A DNA stretch of 64,000 bases, taken from IMG/VR virus record IMGVR_UViG_3300048571_000088, positions 1 through 64,000 of that record; one strand, 5' to 3'. A program made the translations under genes and the position numbers. The notes beneath the pieces were generated by a model that did not search any database, was not told the DNA's origin, and saw nothing but the letters and a program-made list of their open reading frames with translations. This document shows positions 5,273-56,013 of this stretch, piece after piece (within the stretch, counting starts at the first letter, position 1; each line of letters opens with the position of its first letter).

Positions 5273-6331
5273 TTAGTCTTTAACTTTTAGTAGGTAACGA
5301 TTACTAATTACTTTAAATCGTAAATCTGTACTAAGTGATTTAAATACCAAACCTTCCCTGTATTTACCAGACAAGCCAGATTCACCGTCTGCTTCTTTAA
5401 GTAATAACTCTAATAATTCTTCTTTTGATAGTGTATCAGATTTACTAAGTTGTTTTAAAGTAAGATTTTGCATGTATACTGGAACATAGTTTAACCCTAA
5501 CGTTAAACACATAAGTTCTGCATCAGTAGGTACCATATATCCAGCAGTATTAATATTATATACACTGTAAATATAAAGTAGTGGCTCTTTAACTCCTTCA
5601 AAGTTACTTTGAATTTTAGGGGACACTAGTTCCCCTTGAAAGGCAAATCCGTTTGGAATTACATTAAGAACTGGTTTGCCGACTAAATTAAAAGGTGACT
5701 GAGACTCCAAAGGAATCTTTAAATTACGAGAACAAACAGACTGCAATTCATCACTATTGATTACTGTCGTTGAGCTACCATCTAATTTATAAGAGATTTC
5801 AAACACTTCGTCATTTAAGTAAGCACTGTATACTTCATTTAAACAATTCTGTAAACGTTCTAAATCTGTTTTAGGTACTAAGTAAGAAGGGAAACGTGAT
5901 CCACTAGTTTGATTGTCAATTGATGTTTCTGGCTTTTCATACTTACAAATCAATAAGTATTCAGTTAAGTCAGCACCAATCTCAAGACTATTAAAATAAT
6001 TTTGTTGTTCTTCGTTAAAACAAGTTAAAGGAACGCAATATCCTTGAGATACTTGACCGCGCAATTTAATTGTCTTAATTAAATAGCCACTAACGGAATC
6101 ACCATTATCTGTTTGAGTAGTGCGTAAAGGAAGCTTATTTAAGTCAGACTCGTAAGGTTCTAGTTGAGGACACAGACTATCGACTTCATGATAGATGCAC
6201 TTATGACCGACTTGGTACAAGCCTTTTCCAACCACTACTTTCCAACCACGAACAGTTGCTACTTCAATCTTATCCGCTTCAGGAATAGATTGCAGATCTA
6301 AGATTGTTTCTAGTGTTGCTAATTTTCTCAT
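5273..6331 (-). CDS. RNA ligase, DRB0094 family (Rnl2-like)
   Basis: N-terminal OB module (RKLAT...ADKIEVATVRGWKVVV, KLRGQVSQG); ligase motifs KLDGSS, QGEL, REGLVFK and FKVISN. Confidence 0.9.
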   Translation of the reverse strand: MRKLATLETILDLQSIPEADKIEVATVRGWKVVVGKGLYQVGHKCIYHEVDSLCPQLEPYESDLNKLPLRTTQTDNGDSVSGYLIKTIKLRGQVSQGYCVPLTCFNEEQQNYFNSLEIGADLTEYLLICKYEKPETSIDNQTSGSRFPSYLVPKTDLERLQNCLNEVYSAYLNDEVFEISYKLDGSSTTVINSDELQSVCSRNLKIPLESQSPFNLVGKPVLNVIPNGFAFQGELVSPKIQSNFEGVKEPLLYIYSVYNINTAGYMVPTDAELMCLTLGLNYVPVYMQNLTLKQLSKSDTLSKEELLELLLKEADGESGLSGKYREGLVFKSLSTDLRFKVISNRYLLKVKD

Positions 6332-7427
6332 TTGTTTATATCTCGTTATATTTAAAAGTATAAGACTCTAAGAAAGAATCTAATAAAGCAAAAGACTTAA
6401 ATTTTTCAAACTCAGCTAAAGTGTATTTTTTATTGTAAGCATTCCCAGACCAATTAAATTCAATACTGTTAGTATGTGTATACACTATAATATTATTTAC
6501 TGTATTAAATAGATTTATTGCTAACATATTTACTTTATGTTTGACTTGTAAATTCTTTACTTCTTTATAATATTGGGCTAATTCTTTATCTATTAGATCT
6601 TGTTTTAATTCTTTTTGTTTGGCTTGTTCACGCTCTTTAATATTTTCTGGAGAATAGTAACCTAATTCAATATTCTTTTTAATAAGTTGGTATTTATCTT
6701 GAGATAGAGGAACATAGTTACTACGCTTACTATCGTTAATAAAATCAGTCTTTGTTAAATCTTGAAGTAAAATAATTGCTTTGTTTGCGCTTTCTAGCCA
6801 TTTATTAGGTATCTGACTCGAATCTAATAAATAATTAAAGTGTGCGGAATCTTCTGCTTGTGAAAGAATTTGATAATCTTCATCTGAAATACAATTATAA
6901 TACTTTTGAAATGTATCTTTACTTTTTTGATAAAACATATTACTAACAGCGTGCATAGGAGCACCACTGTAATCACACAAATGAAGATCTACAAATATTT
7001 TAAATTCCGGGAAGAATGTAAGGATTTCGTCGTGCAGACAACCAGACGATGTTGCCTTCAGGTGCCCGAATTGATCCTTTTCGTATAAAGTAGCTGTAGC
7101 TGAAAAATCTTGATGTCCATTTTTACATTCATCGTCTAATTTAATTTTGACTTCTAGTTGTAAGTCGCCAATAATTTTACGTGTTTTATACACTAAAGAG
7201 TTACTTGTAGGTTTTAGCATTTACGTTTAATTCCAAAAGTTTCGATACAAGAAAAATTTTCAATTATAATTGGGTTAGGCTTAATCTGTAAATAATAAAA
7301 GTATGAGGCAGAATAAAATAATTGCAATTCTTTAATACTCTCTATAAAACTACTGTAATCTTTTTGATTTTTAATAGTAGTAGTTTTACATTTTTCTTCT
7401 ACTAAAGAATCATAATAATTTAATAGG

Positions 7428-7817
7428 TTATACAATTTTTCTACCGTGTGTTAATGTCGTTACAGTACTTAAATCTTGAGAAGTTTCAGTCCAAGTAGTT
7501 TGCCAAGGACCTCTTAGAGTTAAACACCAAGAATCTTTAGACGCCAGTACACGGTGGTTTTTAGATCTAGAAGTAATTTTAGGAATTAAACTTTTCTTAT
7601 ATTTATATGTTTTACCACTTACTTCTTGTTCAATCATATCGCCAGAGAGGAACCAAGTTAAAGCATTAAAAGCATGAGTATGATACTCTTCTCTACAACC
7701 TTTATTAAATTTAAGTAAAGCAATAGAACATAGATTTTTAATTTCAAAAATAAAGTAACCATCTACTGGAGATTTAGGACCGCCATCTTTTGCTTTACTA
7801 AGTAATTGTGTAAACAT
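7428..7817 (-). CDS. Cupin-fold protein
   Basis: EEYHTHAF...LSG.M.E...HRV...WCLTLRGP cupin-like pattern. Confidence 0.55.
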   Translation of the reverse strand: MFTQLLSKAKDGGPKSPVDGYFIFEIKNLCSIALLKFNKGCREEYHTHAFNALTWFLSGDMIEQEVSGKTYKYKKSLIPKITSRSKNHRVLASKDSWCLTLRGPWQTTWTETSQDLSTVTTLTHGRKIV

Positions 7818-23202: not shown

Positions 23203-23348
23203 CAGAATGTAGTATTATTTTAATTTGTTTGCCTTTAATAGGTTTTTGTGTACATACAAAAATTACTATCAACTGATTGTTAAATACAAATAATAATATT
23301 TAACACTTAGAAACTGATTTTATAAAAAAGTTGCTGTTATTACATTCT
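23203..23348 (-). ncRNA. ACAGCAA module RNA, open form (copy A)
   Basis: 5' AGAAUGUA-AUAACAGCAA ... UACAUUCU-G 3'; the cargo contains two AT-rich hairpins. Confidence 0.65.
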
Positions 23349-23352
23349 TTTG

Positions 23353-23424
23353 TCAGAGCGGATGAACTTTAATCACCAACACTAACTCCCAAGGATAGTG
23401 TATTACCATTAACATTATGTCCTA
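23353..23424 (-). pseudogene. Degenerate tRNA-Pro(UGG)
   Basis: Loop CUUGGGA and tRNA-like spacing, but mismatched stems and a non-canonical T loop. Confidence 0.5.
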
Positions 23425-25427: not shown

Positions 25428-25483
25428 CAGAATACTTTTTGTTTTATAAACTATATAAATTTTAAATTTGCTGTTAGTATTCT
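25428..25483 (-). ncRNA. ACAGCAA module RNA, open form (copy B)
   Basis: UAA-AGAAUACU-AACAGCAA ... AGUAUUCU-G. Confidence 0.65.
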
Positions 25484-25490
25484 TTATGTA

Positions 25491-25566
25491 GTAGACGCTG
25501 GACTCGAGCCAGAAATACTATTTCGAGTGCACGATTATTAGTCGTGGCTACTAGGTTTACGTCTAT
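25491..25566 (-). pseudogene. Degenerate tRNA-like sequence (D arm lost)
   Basis: UAGACG/CGUCUA acceptor, CACGA-CUAAUAA-UCGUG arm, CUGG-CUCGAGU-CCAG T-like arm. Confidence 0.5.
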
Positions 25567-25788
25567 TTAAGATTAGTTAATACTTTTTATTTTATAATCT
25601 CTTCAAGGTAAAACCAATTATCTTCGTAATCATTAAATCTGCCACCGCCATTTAGAACATGTTGCATTCTATTTTCTGGTACGTCGCAAGCTAAAAGTTC
25701 TTCTTTTGTTGGTTTTTGCAGCCAACAATCAATAAAGTAATAGCCATGTTGATTATAATCATTTACAGCTTCTGTAAGAACCCAGACG

Positions 25789-26376: not shown

Positions 26377-26436
26377 CAGATTACATTCAATTATTAAATA
26401 AAAAGTTTAAATTTTGAAGGTTGCTGTTAGTAATCT
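26377..26436 (-). ncRNA. ACAGCAA module RNA, open form (copy C)
   Basis: UAA-AGAUUAC-UAACAGCAA ... GUAAUCU-G. Confidence 0.65.
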
Positions 26437-26441
26437 TTAAT

Positions 26442-26563
26442 TGGCCGAAAGAGTAGGATTTGAACCTACGTGTGCCGGTTCCCATTATAATATTTGCTGT
26501 TAATATTTTTTACAAAATATATTCATATATTACCGGTGCCTTACCAGACTTGGCTATCTTTCG
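26442..26563 (-). ncRNA. tRNA body (Pro-like) with permuted ACAGCAA module inserted in the anticodon loop (copy F)
   Basis: CGAAAGA/UCUUUCG-G-CCA acceptor; intact D and T arms; the CCGGU/ACCGG stem encloses AUAUUUU-GUAA-AAAAUAU-UAACAGCAA; the loop ends UGGGA. Confidence 0.8.
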
Positions 26564-27838: not shown

Positions 27839-27958
27839 TCAGAACGGCAGGGTTCGAACCTACGTCTCTATCTCCCAAAGATAATGTTTAAGAGTTGCTG
27901 TTTGTATTCTTTACAGAATAACTTAACTAAGCGCTTTAACCGACTAAGCTACGTTCTG
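27839..27958 (-). ncRNA. tRNA-Pro(UGG) body with permuted ACAGCAA module inserted 5' of the anticodon arm (copy G)
   Basis: CAGAACG/CGUUCUG acceptor; D arm; insert containing UAUUCU-GUAA-AGAAUA-CAAACAGCAA; then UAUC-UUUGGGA-GAUA and the T arm. Confidence 0.8.
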
Positions 27959-28083: not shown

Positions 28084-29813
28084 AAAATGCTTGAACTCAC
28101 AAGCTGTTAAGTCCTATTGTAAAATAAATTACAATCCCTTAAATCTTATAGTAACTACTTTAGTGTATACATAATGCTCTACAATAATTTACTATCACGT
28201 ATACGTCATAAACCTACATGCTGATAATAGTAATATATTTTAGAAGTTCTATTGTGTCTTGAGTTACGGAAGGCTTGTCGTCTACGCATACAGCCATTTT
28301 AATTTGTTTGTTGAGACATTCTTAAGGCAGCAATAATACCATCAATATGTGAAATATCACAAGAAAATAATCTATCCATTCCATAATGCTGTACTGGACC
28401 ATCATATACATGAATAATATTATCTTTTTGATATACATACCAACCAGCTCTTTTAGCTACTTTAATACCAACACCACCAAACGGATCAGGAAAAGTTTCT
28501 CCTTTATGAAAAACCCACTTTTCAAGAAGGATGCGCATATCATAATATTCATCTTGTGTCATGTTTAATCCTTATTAACTACTTTAAAAAATAAATTTTC
28601 ATCTATAATATTAGAATGTAAATAAAGACGTAAGTTATCTGGAAGATTACTAGCACAGGCTAAATGCACTTGAAACGCTCGATCTACCATATCCCACTTA
28701 TAAAAAGCATAAATATCTTTGACATCTAAAACTACATCATATACGTAGTGAGCATCACACCCAAAAGTAAATTCTAAAGCATTTTCAAAATTAGTAATAA
28801 AGTCTTTAGATTCCTGATCTTCAAATAGATCTTTCATAATCCAACGTTTAATCATTGTAGCTTCTTTATAGTTATTTATTTAATAAGACTGTATAAATTT
28901 TAATAATATTTTTTAAGTTGTCATAGTGTCCGATTAGTTTTAGTTTCTTAGTGTTACTAATAAAACTTCCTTTACCATGCTTGGAATCTAATTTATTTCT
29001 ATCAAAGGGAGAAAATTCAAACTTCATATCTAATTTTGAATTTTTAAATTCTTTTCTAATTGTAAAATCAATATCATTTAATTCAGCTTTAGTATAATAC
29101 AATCTACATCTTTGTTTAAATCTTTGTATTGCATGGTTTGTTACAAATACTTTTTCAGTATTTGTTATATGAAATCTAACTTGATGCATACAGAATCCTT
29201 TTATACTTATTGTGTTATTGACTTGTAAGTAAAATTAATGCCAAGGAATTAAAGTTTCATATTTAAAATTTATTTGTCGCTCAGGTACTAAATCATTTAA
29301 AAATGTAATGTTATTAAGATTAAGTACAGCAGTAGGCAAACCATGCATATCTAGGTTCCAATCTACAAAAGTATTTGGAATTTGTTGTGCAGTAGACTCT
29401 ATTGTTAGTGTGCCAGTTTTTAGTTTTGAATCAAACTCAAGCATGTGACAACTCAAGTTAATACCATCTTTTCTAAGGCGTATGAAAGAACCTGCTAGTT
29501 TTGTATATTGTTGTTTCATATTAATCCTTTATTTTAAAAGTAAAAAGGTGGATGTACAAGAAGTACAATTAATCATTTTCCAAAATAAACAAGTTTTAAA
29601 ATAAGAAGAATACATATTTAAAATAGCTTTATCTTGTACTACATTAGTATCTTCATTCTTACAATAGACACACATATAGTTTGGATCTACTTCTGGTTTT
29701 GTTCTGCCAAAAGGAGAAGGTTTCCAGTTTTCTAGAGAGTAGTATTGAAAAGATACTTGAAGTACTTCATTAGGTTTTGGTAAATACATAATTAAACCTT
29801 ATTATATAAATTG

Positions 29814-29898
29814 TCCTTCCTCTCGGACTCGAACCGAGACTGCCTTTCGGCGCAGGTTTATGAAACCTGTGGATTTAAACCAATTCTCCCAAGGAAGG
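29814..29898 (-). tRNA. tRNA with CAU anticodon (Met/Ile2) and long variable arm
   Basis: CCUUCCU/AGGAAGG-A, CAGGU-UUCAUAA-ACCUG, extra arm GCC-GAAA-GGC, canonical T arm. Confidence 0.85.
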
Positions 29899-30596: not shown

Positions 30597-30717
30597 CAGA
30601 TTAGTATTTTTATCAAGTGGATTCGAACCACTGCCTTTTTTGAGTCAACAAAAACGCTCTAACCTCTAAGCTATGTTCCCTAATGGCGGGAAAGTTTAAA
30701 TTTGCTGTTACTAATCT
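30597..30717 (-). ncRNA. ACAGCAA module RNA, open form enclosing tRNA D, anticodon and T arms (copy D)
   Basis: UAA-AGAUUAGUA-ACAGCAA ... UAGCUUAGAGGUUAGAGC ... AGUGG-UUCGAAU-CCACU ... UACUAAUCU-G; no acceptor stem or CCA. Confidence 0.8.
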
Positions 30718-30723
30718 TTAATG

Positions 30724-31296
30724 TTATTTAATAGAGTTTGCACTAACAAACATATAAATAATATTCATTTCTAGTTCATCAATCAGATTATGAGCTTGGT
30801 TGATTAGCCTGTATTTAATTACTTCTCTGACTTCCATAAGAACAGAACCTAAAAAATTAAGTCCATTCCATTGGTTTGAATCTAAAATTAAAGGATCATC
30901 TGCGGAAAGACCTACACCCCAAATACAATCTACAGGGGATGCCTCTACAAGAAATAAACCATCAGTATCTGACAGTTTTTTTGTTAAATCTTTGTCAGTA
31001 GTAAATTTAAGATAATTTACTTCGTACATTATTTGATAACTTACTTTAGACCATTCTGTGTCTGAATAATTCTTTACGTTTCTTCCTAGTCTTTTAGCAG
31101 TATAAGGATCTTCTGCCTCGTGAATCAATCTCATACTTTCTGTATCTTTAAAGAATTCAGCTTTACGGTACATAAACATATGTTCTGTAGTATAGAAAGT
31201 TAATCCGTTATAGATAATTCCTTTAGGAATATCATGAAAATTACTAAGAAAATTTGTTAAGAAGTAATAATGAGTATCTGTTTTTAAATTATTCAT
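30724..31296 (-). CDS. NADAR (YbiA-like) family protein
   Basis: FLSNFH, TTEHMFMYRKA, AKRLGR, LVEASPVDCIWGVG and GLNFLGSVLMEVRE. Confidence 0.92.
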   Translation of the reverse strand: MNNLKTDTHYYFLTNFLSNFHDIPKGIIYNGLTFYTTEHMFMYRKAEFFKDTESMRLIHEAEDPYTAKRLGRNVKNYSDTEWSKVSYQIMYEVNYLKFTTDKDLTKKLSDTDGLFLVEASPVDCIWGVGLSADDPLILDSNQWNGLNFLGSVLMEVREVIKYRLINQAHNLIDELEMNIIYMFVSANSIK

Positions 31297-31996
31297 TTTC
31301 TGTTTCTAGAATTAAGTTATTAGTTGCTTGATTAAAATTATAAAGTAGACGATCTAAACCAAAAGCAATCTCCAGTACAAAATGATCAGAAGAAAAATCA
31401 GTTCGTTTTGAAACAGAGCAAACTTCCATCCATTTGTCACCATTGTTTACTTCAATATCTAAAGTATTTAAGGAATAAGAAGGTAATCTATCACTAGTAA
31501 CAATACGAGTTGGTAGTTTTAATAGTTCAAGTACTAGATTACCTAAGTCTTTAATAACATTTTCTTGATATTCATTTTTCGTACTAATTGAATAAATACA
31601 TTGAAATTCAAGTTGAAAAAACTCTTTAAATCGACAATGTTTTGTTGCTTGGTCTTGTTCTTTACGGAAAGACTTTGAAGCTTGAAAAACACACAAAGGT
31701 GGTTTGTGACTTAAAGTTAATAATTGGTTTGCATACGCATAGCTTAAAGCAGTTGTTTCTGGCTTTAAAGATAATGTATCTGAAATTTTAAAATAATCAG
31801 ACTCTGAATACTCAGGGTTAATTTGATCATTACTAATCAAACAACTCCCTTCAATCTCATGAAAACCCCAAGCTTTATTTTGACTACGTAAGATGTTTTT
31901 AACACCTAAAGTAATAAATTGTTTGATAAAGTTTCGAATTAAAATATCTTTTTCATTGTAAGCAACAATGCCATTAGTATTTGTCAAACTAAGCAC
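31289..31996 (-). CDS. Truncated class II aminoacyl-tRNA synthetase catalytic domain (GlyRS-like)
   Basis: LKPETT, motif 2 KSFRKE...RFKEFFQLEFQ, YS..TLDIE, WMEVCSVSKRTD, motif 3 LEIAFGLDRL; the protein ends shortly after motif 3. Confidence 0.8.
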   Translation of the reverse strand: MLSLTNTNGIVAYNEKDILIRNFIKQFITLGVKNILRSQNKAWGFHEIEGSCLISNDQINPEYSESDYFKISDTLSLKPETTALSYAYANQLLTLSHKPPLCVFQASKSFRKEQDQATKHCRFKEFFQLEFQCIYSISTKNEYQENVIKDLGNLVLELLKLPTRIVTSDRLPSYSLNTLDIEVNNGDKWMEVCSVSKRTDFSSDHFVLEIAFGLDRLLYNFNQATNNLILETENE

Positions 31997-44460: not shown

Positions 44461-44549
44461 TGGTGGGTGAGGTGGGATTCGAACCCACAATGACTTTCGT
44501 CTTATTTGTTATGAGCAAATCGCACTTCGACCAATATTGCTGCTCACCC
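44461..44549 (-). tRNA. tRNA with CAU anticodon (Ile2/Met) and long variable arm
   Basis: GGGUGAG/CUCACCC-A-CCA, AUUUG-CUCAUAA-CAAAU, extra arm GAC-GAAA-GUC. Confidence 0.88.
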
Positions 44550-46254: not shown

Positions 46255-48627
46255 TTATAAACGAGGGTCTAAAGTTTTTTCTACAGAAAATTCATTAAGA
46301 ATATCTGCGTAAAGATTAAATTTCTCTTCTTCTGTTGCTACTAGAAGCTTTTCATTTAATACTTGTTCTTTGTTACTAGTACTTGCTTTTCTACTAATGT
46401 TTTTACTCATTGATAGACTTTTAAGATTAGTATCATAATCGGACCCATACACTAGACGTAAGTATTCAGGATTACGAATTTTCATGTAAGGGACTACTTT
46501 TTCATCCCAAACATCAGGTTTGACAACAATACCTTCTTTTGTATAGTCTTTAATTTCACTAGAATAATAAGATTTAAGAGCTAAACAATCTTCCTCTGAA
46601 GATAAATCAAAGGAAACAAAAGGAATATTGTATTCTGTGTTGACTACAGAAAGAGATGTCTTTAATAGTGATTTTCCATTATTAAAAATAACGCCGAAAC
46701 ATTTAAAATAAGGATCACACTCACACGAGTGGATATCTAATTGATTTTTAAATTTCTCAAGTTTTTCAAGCTTTAAGTCAATGTCATCAATCCCGTTGAA
46801 GTTTAATTCTTGAAGAAAAATTAACTCTTCTTTGTTACACTCATAGTAAGGAGTAAAAGATTTATCAATTAGTCCTAGTCCAAGTGCACTCCAAGGCATT
46901 AATTCATTATCTAGAATTAGCAGGTCACCTTGGATTTTATCTTTATACTGCAACCATTGCTCTTTTAAAGCTTTTTGTAACCATTCACAGTCTTTAATTT
47001 TCCAACCGTTTCGAGAGATTGCATAACAATCTTCTAATTTAGGAGTAATATAAGACTGAGCACGAGAACCCATAAACTTTGTTTGTGCAATTACTTTTGT
47101 AATTCCTTTAGATAGAAAATAAGAAATTGCTGTGTCAATACCTTCTAGATTATAAACAGACAAATCATGATTAATATAGGAAGGAGAAGGAGTCATAGTA
47201 GGAGACATATACTTATTACCTTGCAACATTAATCGATTAATTTGTTTGATAACAAAAGGATCTAGGTTTTCATACTTTTTAGTATCAAGTTTTTTAAATT
47301 TACTTAAGCAGTAATTAAAATCTTTTGGTTGTACCTCAAGATTAAAATTCTCTGATTGTTCATAAATAAATTCAGGTTTTGTTGAGCTTTGATTAAAGAT
47401 TGCTGCTGTCAAGTAACCACCTTCAACGCAAGCTTGATCAATTGAAATTTTATTTTTATAAGTGTGGCTAGTCTTATTAACATTTACATGTCCAAAAACA
47501 TGCAAAGGTAAAATTAAGTTTGCTTCCTTAAACAAATAATCAACTTGATCTAAAACAGGTACATCCCAGTTAAAATCTTGTTTGAACATATACTTTAAAG
47601 ACTTAGAATCTTTTTTGTTTAGGTACTTATTTAAACAAGGACTGTGAGTAGCAATAAGCTGAAAGGATGCAGTATTGTAGCTAATATAATCGTATGCTTT
47701 AGCGTACAACTTTAAAAACGTTTCGCTGAGTTCTTTGTCAGCTAGTAAAGGAACAATAGAAGAGAAATGTTTTGTTTCCTCATTTAAGCTGTAAACAAAA
47801 GAGTTATCATTTAATTTACGAGCGACCCAATTCTCATGATTACCTTTTACCAGAATTAAGTCTGGACGAGAGTCTAAATACTCCACTAATTCTTTTGTCT
47901 TGTCATTCTTATCAATCCAGTCACCTAAGAGACAGATAGAATAAAGAGTAACATTTTTGGTACTAAAATAAGTTTCAATTTTAAGAATTAGTTTTTTAAG
48001 TGTTTCGACGCACTCGTGAACATCGCCAATAATAGCTAACTGATGATCAAACTGATTTTTAAATACACGTACACCGGAAGACTCTGCCACTACAGAAAAA
48101 TCTTCAAGTTCTTTTTTAATCTTAAAGATTTTTAAATAGTTTTTAGAGTTTAAATGTGAATAAACACTTTCTTTAAGTTTCTTAGATTGTTGTTTAATTA
48201 CACTAATCATACTGTCTTGTTTATTACGAGATAAAGCTAATTGCTCAGGAAGTTCAAACAAGACCATGTAACTTGCATAATGATGTTTATTTGTAACCTC
48301 TAAAACATCATTACGAAAACTCTCTGAAAGACCAGTAGTATCGACAATAATATAATCTGTATTTACAGGATAGGTACAGTTTGCTTCCAAAGTATTGAAC
48401 AAAATACTAAATGCTTGCTGTGATACTGTCATACCTAACTTAGTACGAACATTATCATCTGACGACAAACCTAACAGTTGACGGCGAATAGCATCAGAAG
48501 AAATAATTGTACAAGTAAAGCCTTGTTTAATTAGTTTTTCTTTTAGCTTTTCTGCATAAGTAGTTTTACCTGAGTGAGAAATACCTACTAAGGTAATTAC
48601 ACTGTTAGGTTTAAAATTAAATTCCAC
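46255..48627 (-). CDS. pnkp: Bacterial-type polynucleotide kinase-phosphatase-ligase
   Basis: Kinase GISHSGKTT; phosphoesterase GDVH, GDWIDK, GNHE, FGH; ligase KFMGSRA, DNELMPWS, EGIVVKP, RNPEYLRLVYG; C-terminal DPRL. Confidence 0.92.
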   Translation of the reverse strand: MEFNFKPNSVITLVGISHSGKTTYAEKLKEKLIKQGFTCTIISSDAIRRQLLGLSSDDNVRTKLGMTVSQQAFSILFNTLEANCTYPVNTDYIIVDTTGLSESFRNDVLEVTNKHHYASYMVLFELPEQLALSRNKQDSMISVIKQQSKKLKESVYSHLNSKNYLKIFKIKKELEDFSVVAESSGVRVFKNQFDHQLAIIGDVHECVETLKKLILKIETYFSTKNVTLYSICLLGDWIDKNDKTKELVEYLDSRPDLILVKGNHENWVARKLNDNSFVYSLNEETKHFSSIVPLLADKELSETFLKLYAKAYDYISYNTASFQLIATHSPCLNKYLNKKDSKSLKYMFKQDFNWDVPVLDQVDYLFKEANLILPLHVFGHVNVNKTSHTYKNKISIDQACVEGGYLTAAIFNQSSTKPEFIYEQSENFNLEVQPKDFNYCLSKFKKLDTKKYENLDPFVIKQINRLMLQGNKYMSPTMTPSPSYINHDLSVYNLEGIDTAISYFLSKGITKVIAQTKFMGSRAQSYITPKLEDCYAISRNGWKIKDCEWLQKALKEQWLQYKDKIQGDLLILDNELMPWSALGLGLIDKSFTPYYECNKEELIFLQELNFNGIDDIDLKLEKLEKFKNQLDIHSCECDPYFKCFGVIFNNGKSLLKTSLSVVNTEYNIPFVSFDLSSEEDCLALKSYYSSEIKDYTKEGIVVKPDVWDEKVVPYMKIRNPEYLRLVYGSDYDTNLKSLSMSKNISRKASTSNKEQVLNEKLLVATEEEKFNLYADILNEFSVEKTLDPRL

Positions 48628-49888
48628 AAGGCACCTTTTTTAAAGTAAAAACAGATAAAAGAGTAGGACAACTGTAAGTTGATTTTGCTAGATTACCAAG
48701 AGGTTTAACAACAATATCGTAACCTTCAGTATTAATTTCTGCTATAAAATTAACAAACTCTGATTGTGTAGGTTCCCATAAGTGATCTTTATGTCGAATT
48801 TCTTCTTCTTTGATACCATAATAAACATTAAAATCTTTATTAGGAACAGTAAGAATAATTGTTTCAACTTTTTTATCTACAAGAAATTGAAGAAGAGTAG
48901 AAGCTTCCTCTTTAGGAATATGTTCTAACACTTCAGTACACAAGACTACTTGAACATTCTCAGATAAATCTTCTTGAGTTTGTAAATAATCAAAAATACA
49001 TTGATTGTATAATTCTGTATTCTCAATTTCTCGTTTTTTAACAAACCACTCTAAAGATTCAAAAACATCTGGATCTTTTTCTACGGCGATAATATGTTTA
49101 AAAAGATTCTTAAGATGCTTAACATATAGTCCTTCTCCTGCTCCAAGATCAAGTAAAGTTTTATCGGCAGGATTAGGTAAGTCTTTTACTTCTTTAATAA
49201 TTGCTTTCAGACGTTGTTCACTGTTATTACCGAAATAAAAAGTGAATGGAGTAGTCTGATCAAAAAATAAAGAAGCTTGATTATGCTTTGCTACAGAATT
49301 TGCTTTGCTAATAAAGCTACAAAGACTAATATAATCTTGAGTGTAGCGTGGAAGAATTTCTTGATACTTTTCAAACTCTCCGTCACAAAAATAAAAATAA
49401 TCTGTTGTCTGGTATTGCATATAGCACCAAACACAAATTTTATTTAAAATGTCATGGATTGTATCACCTGTGACAGTCACTTTAAAATGATTTGCTGAGG
49501 TTAAAACTTCAAGGTTAATTCCATCTAAAATAACTTTAGGTCGAGGAACAAGGCACAAGAAACTAGCAAAAGAAGTAAAACCTTTTTCATCCATTTCGTG
49601 TTGTTTTTTAAAACAAGTTGAAAGATGATTTTGAATAAGTTTTAAATATAATTCAGGATTACATGTACTAGAATAATCTAAGTATTCAAAAGAATCAGAA
49701 TTCTTATTTGGAATCTTTGATAAGTACAAGCTAAAATCTTTAGCTACTTTTGGATCAGGGAACCAAGAGAAAGATTTGTACGTACTACAATTCTTTTTAA
49801 ACACCCCAGACTCAATTTGAGTCTGGGGGTTTTTATTTACAATGTATGACAAGTTTGGGTTGTCAGTGCAAATATTTAAAACAGCCAT
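48617..49888 (-). CDS. hen1: Hen1 3'-terminal RNA 2'-O-methyltransferase
   Basis: N-terminal LSYIVNKNP (Hen1-L-like), LDLGAGEG, EVLEH, TVPN..FN and RHKDHLWE; overlaps the pnkp start. Confidence 0.9.
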   Translation of the reverse strand: MAVLNICTDNPNLSYIVNKNPQTQIESGVFKKNCSTYKSFSWFPDPKVAKDFSLYLSKIPNKNSDSFEYLDYSSTCNPELYLKLIQNHLSTCFKKQHEMDEKGFTSFASFLCLVPRPKVILDGINLEVLTSANHFKVTVTGDTIHDILNKICVWCYMQYQTTDYFYFCDGEFEKYQEILPRYTQDYISLCSFISKANSVAKHNQASLFFDQTTPFTFYFGNNSEQRLKAIIKEVKDLPNPADKTLLDLGAGEGLYVKHLKNLFKHIIAVEKDPDVFESLEWFVKKREIENTELYNQCIFDYLQTQEDLSENVQVVLCTEVLEHIPKEEASTLLQFLVDKKVETIILTVPNKDFNVYYGIKEEEIRHKDHLWEPTQSEFVNFIAEINTEGYDIVVKPLGNLAKSTYSCPTLLSVFTLKKVPCGI

Positions 49889-54603: not shown

Positions 54604-56013
54604 TTAGTTTGAATGGCTCATCAAATTATCACGTACTTGTTCAAACGTGAAATAATTTGTAATACTAATATTGTTGTAGTAAACAGTTTTAAGAAGATTT
54701 TCTTGATTGTCAGACAAAGAATCTTGACGAACTGTCTGAATGTTTCCTTGAGAATCTTTTACAACTGCAAGTACACCTTTTTTACTACGTTTAGAAGTAC
54801 TAGTGATAGGGTCTTTATAAACATCTCGCCAAATACCATTAACTTGGACAGCGCTAGCTTTCATTGCCCAGCCCATAGTGTCACGGTTAACTTGTTGTAG
54901 TAGACCACCTCCCATACCAAAAGCAATATTATCTAAAGAATAATTAGTGTCTTTTAGCATTTTTAGGATTTCTTCTAAACTTTCAAGATTAATACCATCA
55001 CCTTGAATTAATCGTACGCAGTCTGGTAAAACTTTATAACCTTTTGAATTATAAGTAACACCAAATTTTTGTTCAAGAAGTTCAAGAGATTTCTTAATAA
55101 CTTCAATAGGGTCCCCGCTGTCTGGACGTACCACGAGCGTACCTCCAAGAGTTTGGATTTTCTCTTTAAGTTCTTCACCCCAGATATTTTCAATAGCATT
55201 AAATAAATCATAGCTATCACTTACTACGGCTACTAAAGAACCAGGTTTTGAGAACTGATTAAGCATATTTTCATATGCATCTTTTTCACCTTCGCGCCCC
55301 CACGAAGTAATAGTAGAGTGCTCTGCTGCTGCGATACTATAACCTAACATTGAAGTAGTATAATAATATTCTTGAGCAGTTAGAATAGCTGGTAGGTTAT
55401 CCGTACCCATAAAGCTAAGTAAGTGTGCAGCACCACCAATACCTGAAGCTTCTAGACTTGTAGTTCCTCGACTACCGAAGTCATTCAACATAAACGGAAG
55501 TTTATCAAGTGTATCACACGTTTCTTTCATGTATTGCTTAATAAGTTTATGACAAGCATACGAAAGAGTAGCAACTGTAGAAGGGTACCAAACGGCACGA
55601 AGAATTGCCGTTTCAACGTAACTGGTTAGCCAAAAACATTCAGGATCAGTATTGACTACTTGTACTACAGGTGTTCCACATGGTACAACAGTACCTTCCG
55701 CTAATGCCTCAATTTTTAAAGGCAAATACCCGCCATGTACTTCAAGAATATGCAACCAACCTTCAGTGTTAAAAGGAACACCATGTTGTTTAAAAAAATC
55801 TGTTGCTGTATTAATTTGAGCTAAAGTAATAGGCTTAGAAAGTACTTCAAGCAGGAAAATTTGTAAACCAAAGAAAACACAATTGGTTAATGAACCTTTA
55901 GTATTGCGTGGTTCAATATAAGAAGAAACAAATTCTGTCTGTGGCGGGTACTGTAGAAAATGTGATGCTTTATAAGAATCAGCATTAAAAATAATAGAAG
56001 ACGATAAAGACAT
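54604..56013 (-). CDS. nadV: Nicotinamide phosphoribosyltransferase
   Basis: DSYKASHFLQYP, LNDFGSRG, AAEHST, VSDSYD, VRPDSGDP, IQGDGI and FGMGGGLLQ. Confidence 0.95.
   Translation of the reverse strand: MSLSSSIIFNADSYKASHFLQYPPQTEFVSSYIEPRNTKGSLTNCVFFGLQIFLLEVLSKPITLAQINTATDFFKQHGVPFNTEGWLHILEVHGGYLPLKIEALAEGTVVPCGTPVVQVVNTDPECFWLTSYVETAILRAVWYPSTVATLSYACHKLIKQYMKETCDTLDKLPFMLNDFGSRGTTSLEASGIGGAAHLLSFMGTDNLPAILTAQEYYYTTSMLGYSIAAAEHSTITSWGREGEKDAYENMLNQFSKPGSLVAVVSDSYDLFNAIENIWGEELKEKIQTLGGTLVVRPDSGDPIEVIKKSLELLEQKFGVTYNSKGYKVLPDCVRLIQGDGINLESLEEILKMLKDTNYSLDNIAFGMGGGLLQQVNRDTMGWAMKASAVQVNGIWRDVYKDPITSTSKRSKKGVLAVVKDSQGNIQTVRQDSLSDNQENLLKTVYYNNISITNYFTFEQVRDNLMSHSN

What the first reader, a model, noticed from the sequence alone, without database searches (positions are those of the whole stretch)
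26442..26563. Intact tRNA body with CCA whose anticodon loop is expanded by a ~45-nt module-bearing insert
Seen: perfect acceptor, D, anticodon and T stems, but the anticodon loop holds an AU-rich insert with the module, ending in UGGGA (Pro-like). The insert is far too short for a group I intron and has no obvious bulge-helix-bulge. Perfect stems argue against a decaying pseudogene. Inference: an unusual intron or a non-decoding tRNA mimic.
Basis: partly seen in the sequence, partly recalled or inferred. Interest (0 to 1): 0.75.

Follow-up and report, generated by a model that had tools for sequence, protein, structure and literature searches.

The report
Phage tRNA with Y-RNA-like arm
A jumbo phage tRNA-Pro gene is intact except for a 45-base hairpin arm in its anticodon loop; the arm is one copy of a conserved phage RNA module that sits beside a Ro60-like protein gene and RNA-repair genes, so it is most likely a new Y-RNA-like tRNA mimic, or less likely a new protein-spliced intron.

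Summary
On the minus strand (26563..26442) lies a full tRNA with perfect stems and an encoded CCA. A 45-nt insert sits between anticodon-stem position 31 and a Pro-type loop, AAUGGGA. It is not decaying: the orthologue in a related 243-kb phage shows six compensatory stem changes and no disruptive ones.

The insert's "module" is a 7-8 bp covarying helix (P2) followed by an ACAGCAA core. It recurs about eight times in the window's tRNA region and in many other phage contigs, but not in cellular genomes. It takes three forms:
- a closed hairpin inside tRNAs, always in the 5' strand of the anticodon stem;
- a leader/trailer pair around bare anticodon-type hairpins, acceptor-less tRNA bodies or circularly permuted tRNAs;
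- tandem arrays.

These RNAs cluster next to a DUF2828/DUF7788 gene, whose predicted fold is Ro60. Pnkp/Hen1 or Rnl ligase genes lie nearby.

Best reading (about 0.45): the arm is the Ro60-like protein's binding site, making this RNA a tRNA-shaped Y-RNA analogue in an RNA-repair or anti-nuclease setting. Main rival (about 0.3): a protein-dependent intron sealed by the phage ligases. The only RNA evidence is an unspliced contig of a sister gene.

The parts
26442..26563 (-). Pro1: complete tRNA-Pro(UGG)-type gene with a 45-nt insert and an encoded CCA. This is the finding.
   Evidence: Rfam tRNA 46.2 bits, full length. Coordinates of every stem verified. Orthologue comparison.
26487..26531 (-). 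45-nt insert between anticodon-stem position 31 and loop position 32. It contains P1 (26531..26527 with 26493..26489), P2a (26520..26514), the GUAA loop (26513..26510), P2b (26509..26503) and the core ACAGCAA (26500..26494).
   Evidence: Sequence and minimum-free-energy fold. The P2 and core architecture is shared with all other copies.
26480..26486 (-). Residual 7-nt anticodon loop AAUGGGA: UGG anticodon, A33, G37.
   Evidence: The orthologue has AUUGGAA at the same place.
26377..26439 (-). Leader/trailer unit starting 2 nt after the CCA. The leader is UAAAGAUUACUAACAGCAA and the trailer is GUAAUCUG (26384..26377). They enclose a hairpin with a Lys-like CUUUUUA loop.
   Evidence: An orthologous unit exists in L064, without a Pro1 gene upstream.
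27839..27958 (-). Pro2: second tRNA-Pro(UGG), loop UUUGGGA, A73. The module arm (27920..27895) interrupts the 5' strand of the anticodon stem (CU|AUC/GAUAG).
   Evidence: Rfam 45.7 bits. Parse. An unspliced RNA contig covers 27763..27953.
40587..40712 (-). t40: tRNA-Gly-type gene (U73) with the module arm (40667..40641) after position 29 (CUC|CC/GGGAG).
   Evidence: The L064 orthologue has the canonical Gly-UCC loop AUUCCAA.
43773..43878 (-). t43: tRNA-like gene carrying the module arm (43853..43828). Its anticodon region is not canonical.
   Evidence: Rfam 25.6 bits, below threshold. Module.
30597..30720 (-). Leader/trailer unit (AGAUUAG with CUAAUCUG) enclosing a tRNA body that lacks an acceptor stem.
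   Evidence: Rfam tRNA positions 6-65. Unit. The L064 orthologue keeps the stems but has a different loop.
25428..25486 (-). Leader/trailer unit (AGAAUAC with GUAUUCUG) with a 32-nt payload, directly after a degenerate tRNA-like sequence.
23203..23350 (-). Leader (AGAAUGU, core at 23337..23331) with a complementary trailer ACAUUCUG about 130 nt downstream.
   Evidence: The trailer was read from the printed sequence, so its coordinates are approximate.
36191..37663 (-). Ro60-like protein (Pfam DUF2828 + DUF7788): a helical-repeat ring domain plus a vWA domain. It is the proposed binder of the module arm.
   Evidence: Pfam. AlphaFold2 model, pLDDT 89.9. The top 13 PDB matches are all Ro60/TROVE, E down to 2e-9.
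46255..48627 (-). Pnkp: kinase, phosphatase and ligase domains. A bacterial-type RNA heal-and-seal enzyme.
   Evidence: Pfam AAA_33, Metallophos and PNKP_ligase.
48617..49888 (-). Hen1: RNA 3'-terminal 2'-O-methyltransferase, the partner of Pnkp.
   Evidence: Pfam Hen1_N plus methyltransferase domains.
5306..5803 (-). Rnl2-family RNA ligase domain, within an open frame of 364 aa.
   Evidence: PF09414, E 5e-15.

Best explanation
**What it is.** The gene makes a tRNA-Pro-shaped RNA that permanently carries an extra 45-nt arm. It is not a pseudogene and probably not an ordinary decoder.

**The arm.** It consists of helix P1, helix P2 capped by GUAA, and an unpaired ACAGCAA. It is one copy of a phage-specific RNA module.

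**Proposed mechanism.** The module is the binding site of the phage's Ro60-like ring protein, in the way that Ro60 binds the bulged stem of Y RNAs. The resulting particle displays a tRNA body and an anticodon stem-loop beside the protein. It would work with the co-encoded RNA repair enzymes (Pnkp/Hen1, Rnl-type ligase) in the contest with host nucleases that cut tRNAs, as a decoy, sensor or repair scaffold.

**Shown here:**
- the conserved structure;
- the covarying helix;
- the three topologies;
- the gene linkage;
- the protein fold.

**Inferred:**
- that the protein binds the arm;
- the biological role.
For: 1. **Selection on the cloverleaf.** There are six compensatory double substitutions in all four stems against the L070 orthologue and none disruptive, while the insert has diverged. 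A strain about 3 % diverged has 17 differences in the neighbouring ORF and none in the covered tRNA parts.
2. **P2 is a real helix.** 52 of 106 core occurrences have a complementary partner, against 11.8 % for shuffled arms. More than 20 distinct covarying versions exist.
3. **The module frames RNAs that cannot decode.** Examples are bare anticodon-type hairpins (7 of 18 small payloads against 6 % of shuffles; a Lys-type CUUUUAA hairpin recurs in at least six contigs), acceptor-less tRNA bodies whose loop is not conserved, and a tRNA-like RNA with a GAAA tetraloop in place of the anticodon loop. The common denominator is the arm followed about 10 nt later by an anticodon stem-loop.
4. **The architecture matches Y RNAs.** Leader/trailer units have a 5'/3' stem plus an internal loop with a conserved motif, often with a tRNA-like domain in both known orientations (PMC4201824, PMC12135203).
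5. **The RNAs lie beside a Ro60-fold gene.** The gaps are 13 nt in L007, 20 nt in L103, 32 nt in L068, 48 nt in L070, about 220 nt in L074 and 72 nt for t37 in the window. Ten of the eleven loci fetched by protein homology alone carry them clearly; L102 has only a weak variant.
6. **L103 has ordinary copies too.** It has uninterrupted Glu-UUC, His-GUG and Lys-UUU tRNAs as well as module-framed copies of the same types.
7. **The loop is not canonical.** Pro1 has A33. An orthologue of Pro2 (L068a) has lost its anticodon arm but keeps the rest.
8. **Unspliced RNA exists.** A metatranscriptome contig covers Pro2 with the insert retained.
Against: - No binding test was possible: the co-folding tool does not fold protein-RNA jobs.
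- The Y-RNA motif CGAA is absent, and no Rfam Y RNA model matches.
- The remaining loops are strongly tRNA-like: U33 in 9 of 11 and a purine at 37 in 10 of 11.
- The anticodons (Pro-UGG, Gly-UCC, Thr-UGU, Lys-UUU, Glu-UUC) are mostly of the kind phages usually carry, and include those I recall for T4 (Pro, Gly, Thr; own knowledge).
- The window has no uninterrupted Pro or Gly tRNA.
- Joined flanks restore perfect stems.

All these points fit a tRNA that is matured by removal of the arm. The RNA contig extends 76 nt past the 3' end, so it could be a precursor or DNA carry-over.
Confidence: 0.45

Rival explanations
1. **Protein-dependent tRNA intron.** The arm marks an intron that an unidentified endonuclease cuts out. 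The phage heal-and-seal enzymes then join the exons: Pnkp/Hen1 here, Rnl1/Rnl2 in relatives. Hen1 would leave a 2'-O-methyl at the junction. The same machinery would mature the circularly permuted tRNA genes of relatives.
For: - The insert always interrupts the 5' strand of the anticodon stem (after positions 27-31).
- Joining the flanks gives all-Watson-Crick 5-bp stems and canonical loops in Pro2, t40/L064a, L020a, L075a (Lys), L074c, L077a (Pro), L067a and L070a.
- Relatives have permuted tRNA genes with a closed acceptor, an encoded ACCA and the break at the same stem position: L007 and L103 tRNA-Glu.
- RNA ligases and end-healing enzymes are co-encoded.
- The window has no uninterrupted Pro or Gly tRNA.
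- A 27-nt stretch of the insert is identical in an unrelated tRNA body (L072a), which suggests that the insert moves.
Against: - No endonuclease candidate was found: the genome has no tRNA_int_endo and no RtcB.
- There is no bulge-helix-bulge.
- The distance from the conserved core to the 3' junction varies from 7 to 12 nt, so there is no simple ruler.
- A split stem can also form around an unexcised three-way junction.
- The same module frames hairpins and tRNA-like RNAs that could never become tRNAs.
- Pro1 would have A33.
- Only unspliced RNA was seen.
Confidence: 0.3
2. **Processing punctuation.** The leader/trailer helices are cleavage signals that separate tRNAs in the polycistronic transcript. 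Copies inside tRNAs would be accidental insertions of that signal.
For: - Leaders begin 0-4 nt after tRNA 3' ends, and trailers end a few nt before the next tRNA.
- Conserved UAA and G flank the outer end of P2.
- Tandem arrays occur in L016.
Against: - The helix is only 7-8 bp, too short for RNase III (own knowledge).
- This reading does not explain the conserved ACAGCAA, the conserved payload hairpins, the constant position of inserts in the anticodon stem, or the linkage to the Ro60-like gene.
Confidence: 0.12
3. **Miniature mobile DNA element.** The insert landed in tRNA genes and inactivated them. The RNA itself has no role.
For: - Short direct repeats of 1-3 nt flank most inserts: AAU in Pro1, CUU in L075a, AUU in L074c (read).
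- An identical insert segment occurs in unrelated tRNA bodies.
- Homing endonuclease and TnpB genes are frequent nearby.
Against: - Compensatory evolution of all four stems after the insertion.
- Long-range RNA-level covariation of P2 in leader/trailer units.
- Strict co-orientation with transcription.
- Canonical loop features are retained.
Confidence: 0.08
4. **Self-cleaving or self-splicing small ribozyme.**
For: It is a conserved unpaired motif next to a helix, in a phage setting.
Against: - No match to any Rfam ribozyme or intron family, even at E up to 1.
- Only about 45 nt, with a single conserved 7-nt element.
- The resemblance to a UACUAAC branch site is coincidental, because the UAC lies in the covarying helix.
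Confidence: 0.03

Closest known systems
Y RNAs with tRNA-like domains (bacterial YrlA and Yrn1, phage phiLo Yrl1/2) bound by Ro60/Rsr
   Same: - A small RNA encoded next to a Ro60-fold gene.
- A stem formed by the RNA's 5' and 3' ends, with an adjacent internal loop carrying a conserved motif.
- A tRNA-like domain in either orientation, including a closed acceptor.
- Residence in RNA-repair gene neighbourhoods, also in phages (PMC4201824, PMC12135203, PMC7824862).
   Different: - The conserved motif is ACAGCAA, not CGAA, and no Rfam Y RNA model matches.
- The protein is DUF2828/DUF7788 (about 12-18 % identity to Ro60s), not Pfam TROVE.
- Here the binding arm can sit as a closed hairpin inside an otherwise complete tRNA with CCA.
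- An anticodon stem-loop is retained next to the arm.
- There are many copies per genome.
Archaeal and eukaryotic protein-spliced tRNA introns, split tRNAs (Nanoarchaeum) and circularly permuted tRNA genes (Cyanidioschyzon and other algae)
   Same: - One RNA signal appears as an intron, as a leader/trailer pair and in permuted genes.
- Introns sit at non-canonical positions.
- An RNA ligase would be needed.
   Different: - No bulge-helix-bulge and no splicing endonuclease gene.
- The host is presumably bacterial.
- The position is always 5' of the anticodon, within the stem.
- Splicing has not been shown.
Group I introns in bacterial and phage tRNA anticodon loops
   Same: An intervening sequence in or near the anticodon loop of a tRNA gene, in a phage or bacterial setting, with homing endonuclease genes nearby.
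   Different: It is 45 nt instead of 200 nt or more. There is no P1-P9 core, no Rfam match, and the position is different.
Phage and bacterial anticodon-break repair (T4 Pnkp/Rnl1 against PrrC; bacterial Pnkp/Hen1)
   Same: The same enzyme families are encoded close to the tRNA cluster. The displayed loops, notably Lys-UUU, are classical nuclease targets (own knowledge).
   Different: Those systems are not known to include dedicated RNA partners or tRNAs with built-in arms.

Membership tests
tRNA (Rfam RF00005) | Full cloverleaf scoring above the curated threshold | tested here: met
   46.2 bits against a threshold of 29, model positions 1-71. All stems verified.
tRNA (functional decoder) | A 7-nt anticodon loop with U33 and a purine at 37, contiguous with the stem | tested here: not met
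   The loop is 52 nt as encoded. Even after conceptual removal of the insert it reads AAUGGGA, with A33.
Y RNA / YrlA | Encoded adjacent to a Ro60-type gene | tested here: met
   Module-bearing RNAs lie within 13-220 nt of the Ro60-like gene in L007, L103, L068, L070 and L074, and within 10 kb in ten of the eleven loci fetched by protein alone; L102 has only a weak variant. Pro1 itself is about 10 kb from the gene.
Y RNA / YrlA | A stem formed by the 5' and 3' ends, flanking an internal loop with a conserved motif | tested here: inconclusive
   Met for the leader/trailer units: covarying P2 plus ACAGCAA. In the finding itself the stem is a closed hairpin inside a tRNA. RNA ends were not mapped.
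Y RNA / YrlA | CGAA (GNCGAAN0-1G) motif, or a match to the Rfam Y RNA models | tested here: not met
   No such match at gathering score or at E up to 1. The conserved motif is ACAGCAA.
Y RNA / YrlA | Bound by the Ro60 protein | not testable with these tools
   The co-folding job was not run for a protein-RNA pair.
Ro60/TROVE protein (window 36191..37663) | Helical-repeat ring plus a C-terminal vWA domain | tested here: met
   Model pLDDT 89.9. The top 13 PDB matches are all Ro60, full length, TM about 0.55.
Ro60/TROVE protein (window 36191..37663) | Match to Pfam TROVE (PF05731) | tested here: not met
   No TROVE match in the genome. The Pfam families are DUF2828 and DUF7788.
Bulge-helix-bulge tRNA intron | Two 3-nt bulges separated by a 4-bp helix at the splice sites | tested here: not met
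   Where junctions can be inferred, the exon-intron junctions form three-way junctions with 0-7 nt linkers.
Bulge-helix-bulge tRNA intron | A splicing endonuclease is available | tested here: not met
   PF01974 is absent from the 242-kb genome; the controls rang in four archaea. The host is unknown.
Group I intron | A catalytic core of about 200 nt or more, with P1-P9 | tested here: not met
   The insert is 45 nt, with no Rfam intron match.
Circularly permuted tRNA gene (relatives L007, L103) | 3' half upstream of the 5' half, with acceptor strands joined by a short linker | tested here: met
   L007 has two units. L103 has a tRNA-Glu with an ACCA linker and the stem ACG|GC/GCCGU.
Circularly permuted tRNA gene (relatives L007, L103) | Maturation into a contiguous tRNA | not testable with these tools
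   No RNA data are available for those contigs.
Pnkp/Hen1 RNA repair pair | A kinase-phosphatase-ligase protein next to a Hen1_N-methyltransferase protein | tested here: met
   Pfam domains on the adjacent, overlapping genes 46255..48627 and 48617..49888.

The most novel reading that the evidence does not exclude
The module is the signal of a protein-dependent tRNA splicing and permuted-tRNA maturation pathway in bacteriophages. An unidentified nuclease, guided by the Ro60-like protein on the P2/ACAGCAA arm, would excise the arm. Pnkp/Hen1 or Rnl ligases would join the ends, and Hen1 would leave a protective 2'-O-methyl in the anticodon stem. These would be the first non-self-splicing tRNA introns and the first permuted tRNA genes known in viruses of bacteria.
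Probability: 0.3. Interest if true: 0.95.

Novelty: new variant of a known kind. Interest (0 to 1): 0.8.

Why it matters
**For Ro60 biology.** The function of Ro60-Y RNA particles in bacteria and phages is still poorly understood. Why Y RNAs imitate tRNAs is also an open question. This system offers many natural variants of one RNA module: complete tRNAs with an arm, permuted tRNAs, and bare anticodon hairpins. All sit next to a divergent Ro60-like gene and RNA ligases. That points to display of anticodon stem-loops as the common function, and it makes the idea directly testable.

**For a large uncharacterised protein family.** It would give DUF2828/DUF7788, with thousands of members, a likely RNA partner.

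**If the rival is right.** It would extend enzymatic tRNA splicing and permuted tRNA genes to phages of bacteria.

**For annotation.** Standard tRNA finders miss or mis-call these genes, so phage tRNA counts are affected.

Tried and rejected
- **Known phage genomes.** A near-identity search of 22-31 kb against GenBank phages found nothing.
- **Co-folding.** The job pairing the Ro60-like protein with the Pro1 RNA was not folded by the tool, so it gives no evidence either way.
- **Pnkp ligase in relatives.** The search in five relatives' records found nothing, but the control genomes did not ring either and the records are 12-48 % complete. It is uninformative.
- **Cellular genomes.** The exact 18-mer gave 24 hits, all without a trailer or tRNA context. 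That is about the number I estimate chance would give (contexts).
- **Hairpin-form scans of the viral collection.** Two scans gave almost only chance hits. One new true case (L041) was found, and L007 was re-found.
- **Recurring protein neighbours.** They turned out to be homing endonucleases (HNH, GIY-YIG, LAGLIDADG-like), which are generic for phage tRNA regions.
- **Sequence search of the Ro60-like protein against PDB.** Nothing found; only the fold comparison worked.
- **A fixed "+10 nt" 3' splice-site rule.** Considered and rejected, because the distance ranges from 7 to 12 nt.
- **The UACUAAC-AG resemblance to a branch site.** Rejected as coincidence.
- **Uninterrupted orthologues.** None found; the best identity was 70-73 %, which is tRNA background.
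- **Folding energies.** They do not distinguish the arm from shuffles.
- **Literature.** Searches found no description of such inserts or of permuted tRNAs in bacteriophages. One key review (PMC5062991) is not held.

Full report
**1. The object**

The window is the first 64 kb of a 242,588-bp virus record from freshwater metagenomes, 33 % G+C, with all genes in this part on the minus strand.

On the minus strand, 26563..26445 matches the Rfam tRNA model over its full length (46.2 bits, threshold 29). Read directly, the acceptor, anticodon and T stems are perfect. The D stem has three pairs. A discriminator G is followed by an encoded CCA.

The anticodon loop is 52 nt: a 45-nt insert (26531..26487), then AAUGGGA. 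C1-G72 and the UGG anticodon are Pro-like. Position 33 is A, not U. Default ARAGORN misses the gene; with introns allowed it calls tRNA-Pro.

**2. Not a pseudogene**

A related 243-kb phage (locus L070) carries the orthologue. It has the same C1-G72/G73 acceptor type and a similar D loop. Its anticodon stem is CCUGU/ACAGG. A 59-nt hairpin-bearing insert sits at the same place and is followed by the canonical Pro loop AUUGGAA.

The alignment shows six compensatory double substitutions: three in the acceptor stem and one each in the D, anticodon and T stems. None is disruptive. The insert sequence has largely diverged.

In a strain about 3 % diverged, a DNA contig has 17 differences in the neighbouring ORF and none in the 138 nt covering the tRNA's 3' half and part of the insert.

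**3. The module**

TAACAGCAA is over-represented: 5 copies against 0.97 expected, all on the gene strand. It extends to a consensus close to UAAAGAAUACUAACAGCAA, with 7-8 copies between 23 and 44 kb.

- Four copies lie inside tRNA-like genes: Pro1, a second tRNA-Pro (Pro2) at 27958..27839, t40 and t43. In these, the AGAAUAC part pairs with an upstream arm through a GUAA loop (helix P2).
- The intergenic copies lack that upstream arm. Instead they have a complementary trailer, such as GUAUUCUG, 30-130 nt downstream.

The helix covaries. Examples are AGAAUAC/GUAUUCU, AGAUUAC/GUAAUCU, AGAUUAG/CUAAUCU, AGAUUGC/GCAAUCU and AGGAUCG/CGAUCCU, and there are more than 20 versions in all. Across 19 loci, 52 of 106 core occurrences have a partner, against 11.8 % for shuffled arms.

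Folding energy alone is not exceptional (z about -0.9).

**4. Distribution**

The 18-mer lies next to tRNA genes in about half of its hits in the viral collection. All 24 hits in 185,579 prokaryote genomes lack a trailer or tRNA context, and I judge them chance matches.

The module also occurs in a 48 % G+C phage (L103) with an invariant ACAGCAA core. It therefore looks phage-restricted and old.

**5. Three topologies**

(a) *Closed hairpin inside a tRNA.* About 15 further over-long tRNA genes of this kind turned up in the relatives, all but three of them full-length Rfam tRNA matches of 115-147 nt. Wherever it can be resolved, the insert interrupts the 5' strand of the anticodon stem, or its junction with the loop, after positions 27-31. 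The flanks then complete an all-Watson-Crick 5-bp stem. Examples:
- Pro2: CU|AUC with GAUAG
- t40 and its L064 orthologue: CUC|CC with GGGAG
- L077a (Pro): ACG|GC with GCCGU
- L075a (Lys): ACU|GC with GCAGU

The remaining loops have U33 in 9 of 11 (P = 0.0014) and a purine at 37 in 10 of 11.

(b) *Leader/trailer pairs.* They often start 0-4 nt after a tRNA 3' end. They enclose one of three things:
- bare hairpins with anticodon-type 7-nt loops (7 of 18 against 6 % of shuffles; Lys-type CUUUUAA recurs in at least six contigs, and Asn, Pro and Thr types also occur);
- tRNA bodies without an acceptor stem (window 30720..30597; its L064 orthologue keeps the stems but not the loop);
- circularly permuted tRNAs (L007; L103 tRNA-Glu with an encoded ACCA linker).

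L103 also has a tRNA-like unit with a GAAA tetraloop where the anticodon loop should be.

(c) *Tandem arrays* (L016).

The shared feature of all forms is the arm followed 7-12 nt later by an anticodon stem-loop.

**6. Gene context**

The window encodes:
- Pnkp (kinase, phosphatase, ligase) and Hen1, as overlapping neighbours at 46255..49888;
- an Rnl2-family ligase (5306..5803);
- TelA;
- a DUF2828/DUF7788 protein (36191..37663).

There is no RtcB, no archaeal-type splicing endonuclease and no Pfam TROVE protein.

The DUF2828/DUF7788 model (pLDDT 89.9) matches only Ro60 proteins at the top of a PDB fold search: 13 hits, E down to 2e-9, full length, including a phage Ro60.

Module RNAs abut this gene in many contigs: 13 nt downstream in L007, 20 nt upstream in L103, 32 nt in L068, 48 nt in L070, and three insert-bearing tRNAs within about 800 nt downstream in L074. 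Ten of the eleven loci fetched purely by homology of this protein carry them clearly; the eleventh, L102, has only a possible weak variant.

The gene's neighbours are RNA ligases (Rnl1 and Rnl2 types), a kinase-phosphatase, TelA/TerD and NADAR.

**7. RNA evidence**

One metatranscriptome run holds a single 192-nt contig on 27763..27953, with no differences and no gaps. It covers Pro2 with its insert plus 76 nt of trailer. Nothing else in the 5.9 kb laid is covered, and no joints are seen.

This shows that an unspliced molecule exists. It cannot exclude splicing, because contigs drop rare forms and mature tRNAs are poorly captured. It could also be a precursor or DNA carry-over.

**8. Interpretation**

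Known Ro60 partners, the Y RNAs, have these features:
- they are encoded beside the Ro60 gene;
- they have a 5'/3' stem flanking an internal loop with a conserved motif;
- in bacteria they often carry a tRNA-like domain in either orientation, with a closed acceptor;
- they occur in phages and in RNA-repair neighbourhoods.

The leader/trailer units fit this architecture, with a different motif and a divergent protein. The finding is then the same protein-binding arm built into a complete tRNA-Pro.

I rank this reading first (about 0.45). It explains all topologies, including the RNAs that cannot decode. It also explains the redundancy with ordinary isoacceptors in L103, the A33, and the loss of the anticodon arm in L068a.

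The intron reading (about 0.3) explains other facts best:
- the restored stems and canonical loops;
- the usual phage-type choice of anticodons;
- the absence of ordinary Pro and Gly tRNAs in this genome;
- the permuted genes;
- the co-encoded ligases.

Its weaknesses are that it lacks a nuclease, a splice-site rule and any spliced RNA.

The two readings are not exclusive: the Ro60-like protein could be the factor that recognises the arm for processing.

Punctuation signal, inert mobile insertion and ribozyme rank lower, for the reasons given under the rival explanations.

**9. Novelty**

I found no description of this module, of tRNAs with such arms, or of permuted tRNA genes in bacteriophages in the searchable literature. 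That does not prove there is none.

On the preferred reading this is a new variant of the Ro60-Y RNA kind. On the rival reading it would be categorically new.

Noticed in passing
window 37735..37843 (-): This tRNA-like gene (Rfam 38.3 bits) lies 72 nt upstream of the Ro60-like gene. It carries a roughly 35-nt hairpin arm in the variable-arm position, followed by an ACAACAA core-like motif. So the module may also sit 3' of the anticodon arm. Its loop reads CUAAAAA.
   Followed up: partly
window 23350..23400 (-): Just upstream of the 23346 leader is a Pro-type anticodon hairpin (loop CUUGGGA) followed by a T-arm-like hairpin, without the rest of a tRNA. It is a third Pro-UGG-type loop in the window.
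   Followed up: no
window 25490..25568 (-): A degenerate tRNA-like sequence with an odd T loop (CUCGAGU) and loop CUAAUAA. Neither ARAGORN nor Rfam calls it. It lies immediately 5' of the 25486 leader/trailer unit.
   Followed up: no
window 29813..29898 and 44461..44549 (-): Two tRNAs with a CAU anticodon are 86-89 nt long; the alignment of the second shows the extra length as a variable-region insertion. That is unusual for Met/Ile2-type tRNAs.
   Followed up: no
window 31289..31996, 33924..35075, 54604..56013 (-): Three proteins: a 235-aa protein with a weak class II aminoacyl-tRNA synthetase core match, a TelA homologue, and a nicotinamide/nicotinate phosphoribosyltransferase. All fit the RNA-repair and NAD-conflict theme.
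   Followed up: no
Pro1 insert (window 26493..26520) and L072:12179-12298: A 27-28 nt stretch of the insert (P2 hairpin plus the start of the core) is identical in an unrelated tRNA body of another phage. Pro1's true orthologue (L070) has a different insert. This suggests that inserts move or are converted between tRNA genes. L072's core reads ACAGCUC.
   Followed up: partly
insert boundaries in Pro1, L075a, L074c, L067a, L070a, Pro2, t40, L020a: Short direct repeats of 1-3 nt flank most inserts (AAU, CUU, AUU, UU, AU, U). They resemble target-site duplication or microhomology. The splice junction is therefore ambiguous by that many bases.
   Followed up: partly
L077:6128-6358 and 6388-7716: A HEARO RNA (138 bits) lies next to an HNH/RRXRR protein. 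This is an IscB-type RNA-guided nuclease locus directly downstream of the Ro60-like gene. TnpB-type genes (OrfB_IS605) occur in L064 and L067.
   Followed up: no
L072:6843-6914: A tRNA with anticodon CUA, an amber-suppressor type that ARAGORN labels Pyl, in a related phage. I did not test whether that phage recodes TAG.
   Followed up: no
L075:2529-2774 and L102:4898-5104: Relatives carry ribosomal protein homologues (L7/L12 domain, S21).
   Followed up: no
L070, L074 and L075 insert-bearing tRNAs: In one sub-clade the P2 hairpin is capped by a conserved 10-11 nt loop (UGAUUAUUAA-like) instead of GUAA. This may be a second recognition element.
   Followed up: no
window 27839 and 27848 (strain in run X2): Natural variants in Pro2 change the discriminator from A73 to G and turn the U50.G64 wobble into a U-A pair. 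This is again consistent with selection on the fold.
   Followed up: partly
3' ends of Pro2, t40, t43, L070a, L068a, L077a, L072a: Many of these genes end in discriminator + CAA rather than CCA. Others (Pro1, L075a, L074b/c and the L103 permuted units) encode CCA. The tetraloop-capped tRNA-like unit of L103, which cannot decode, also encodes ACCA.
   Followed up: no
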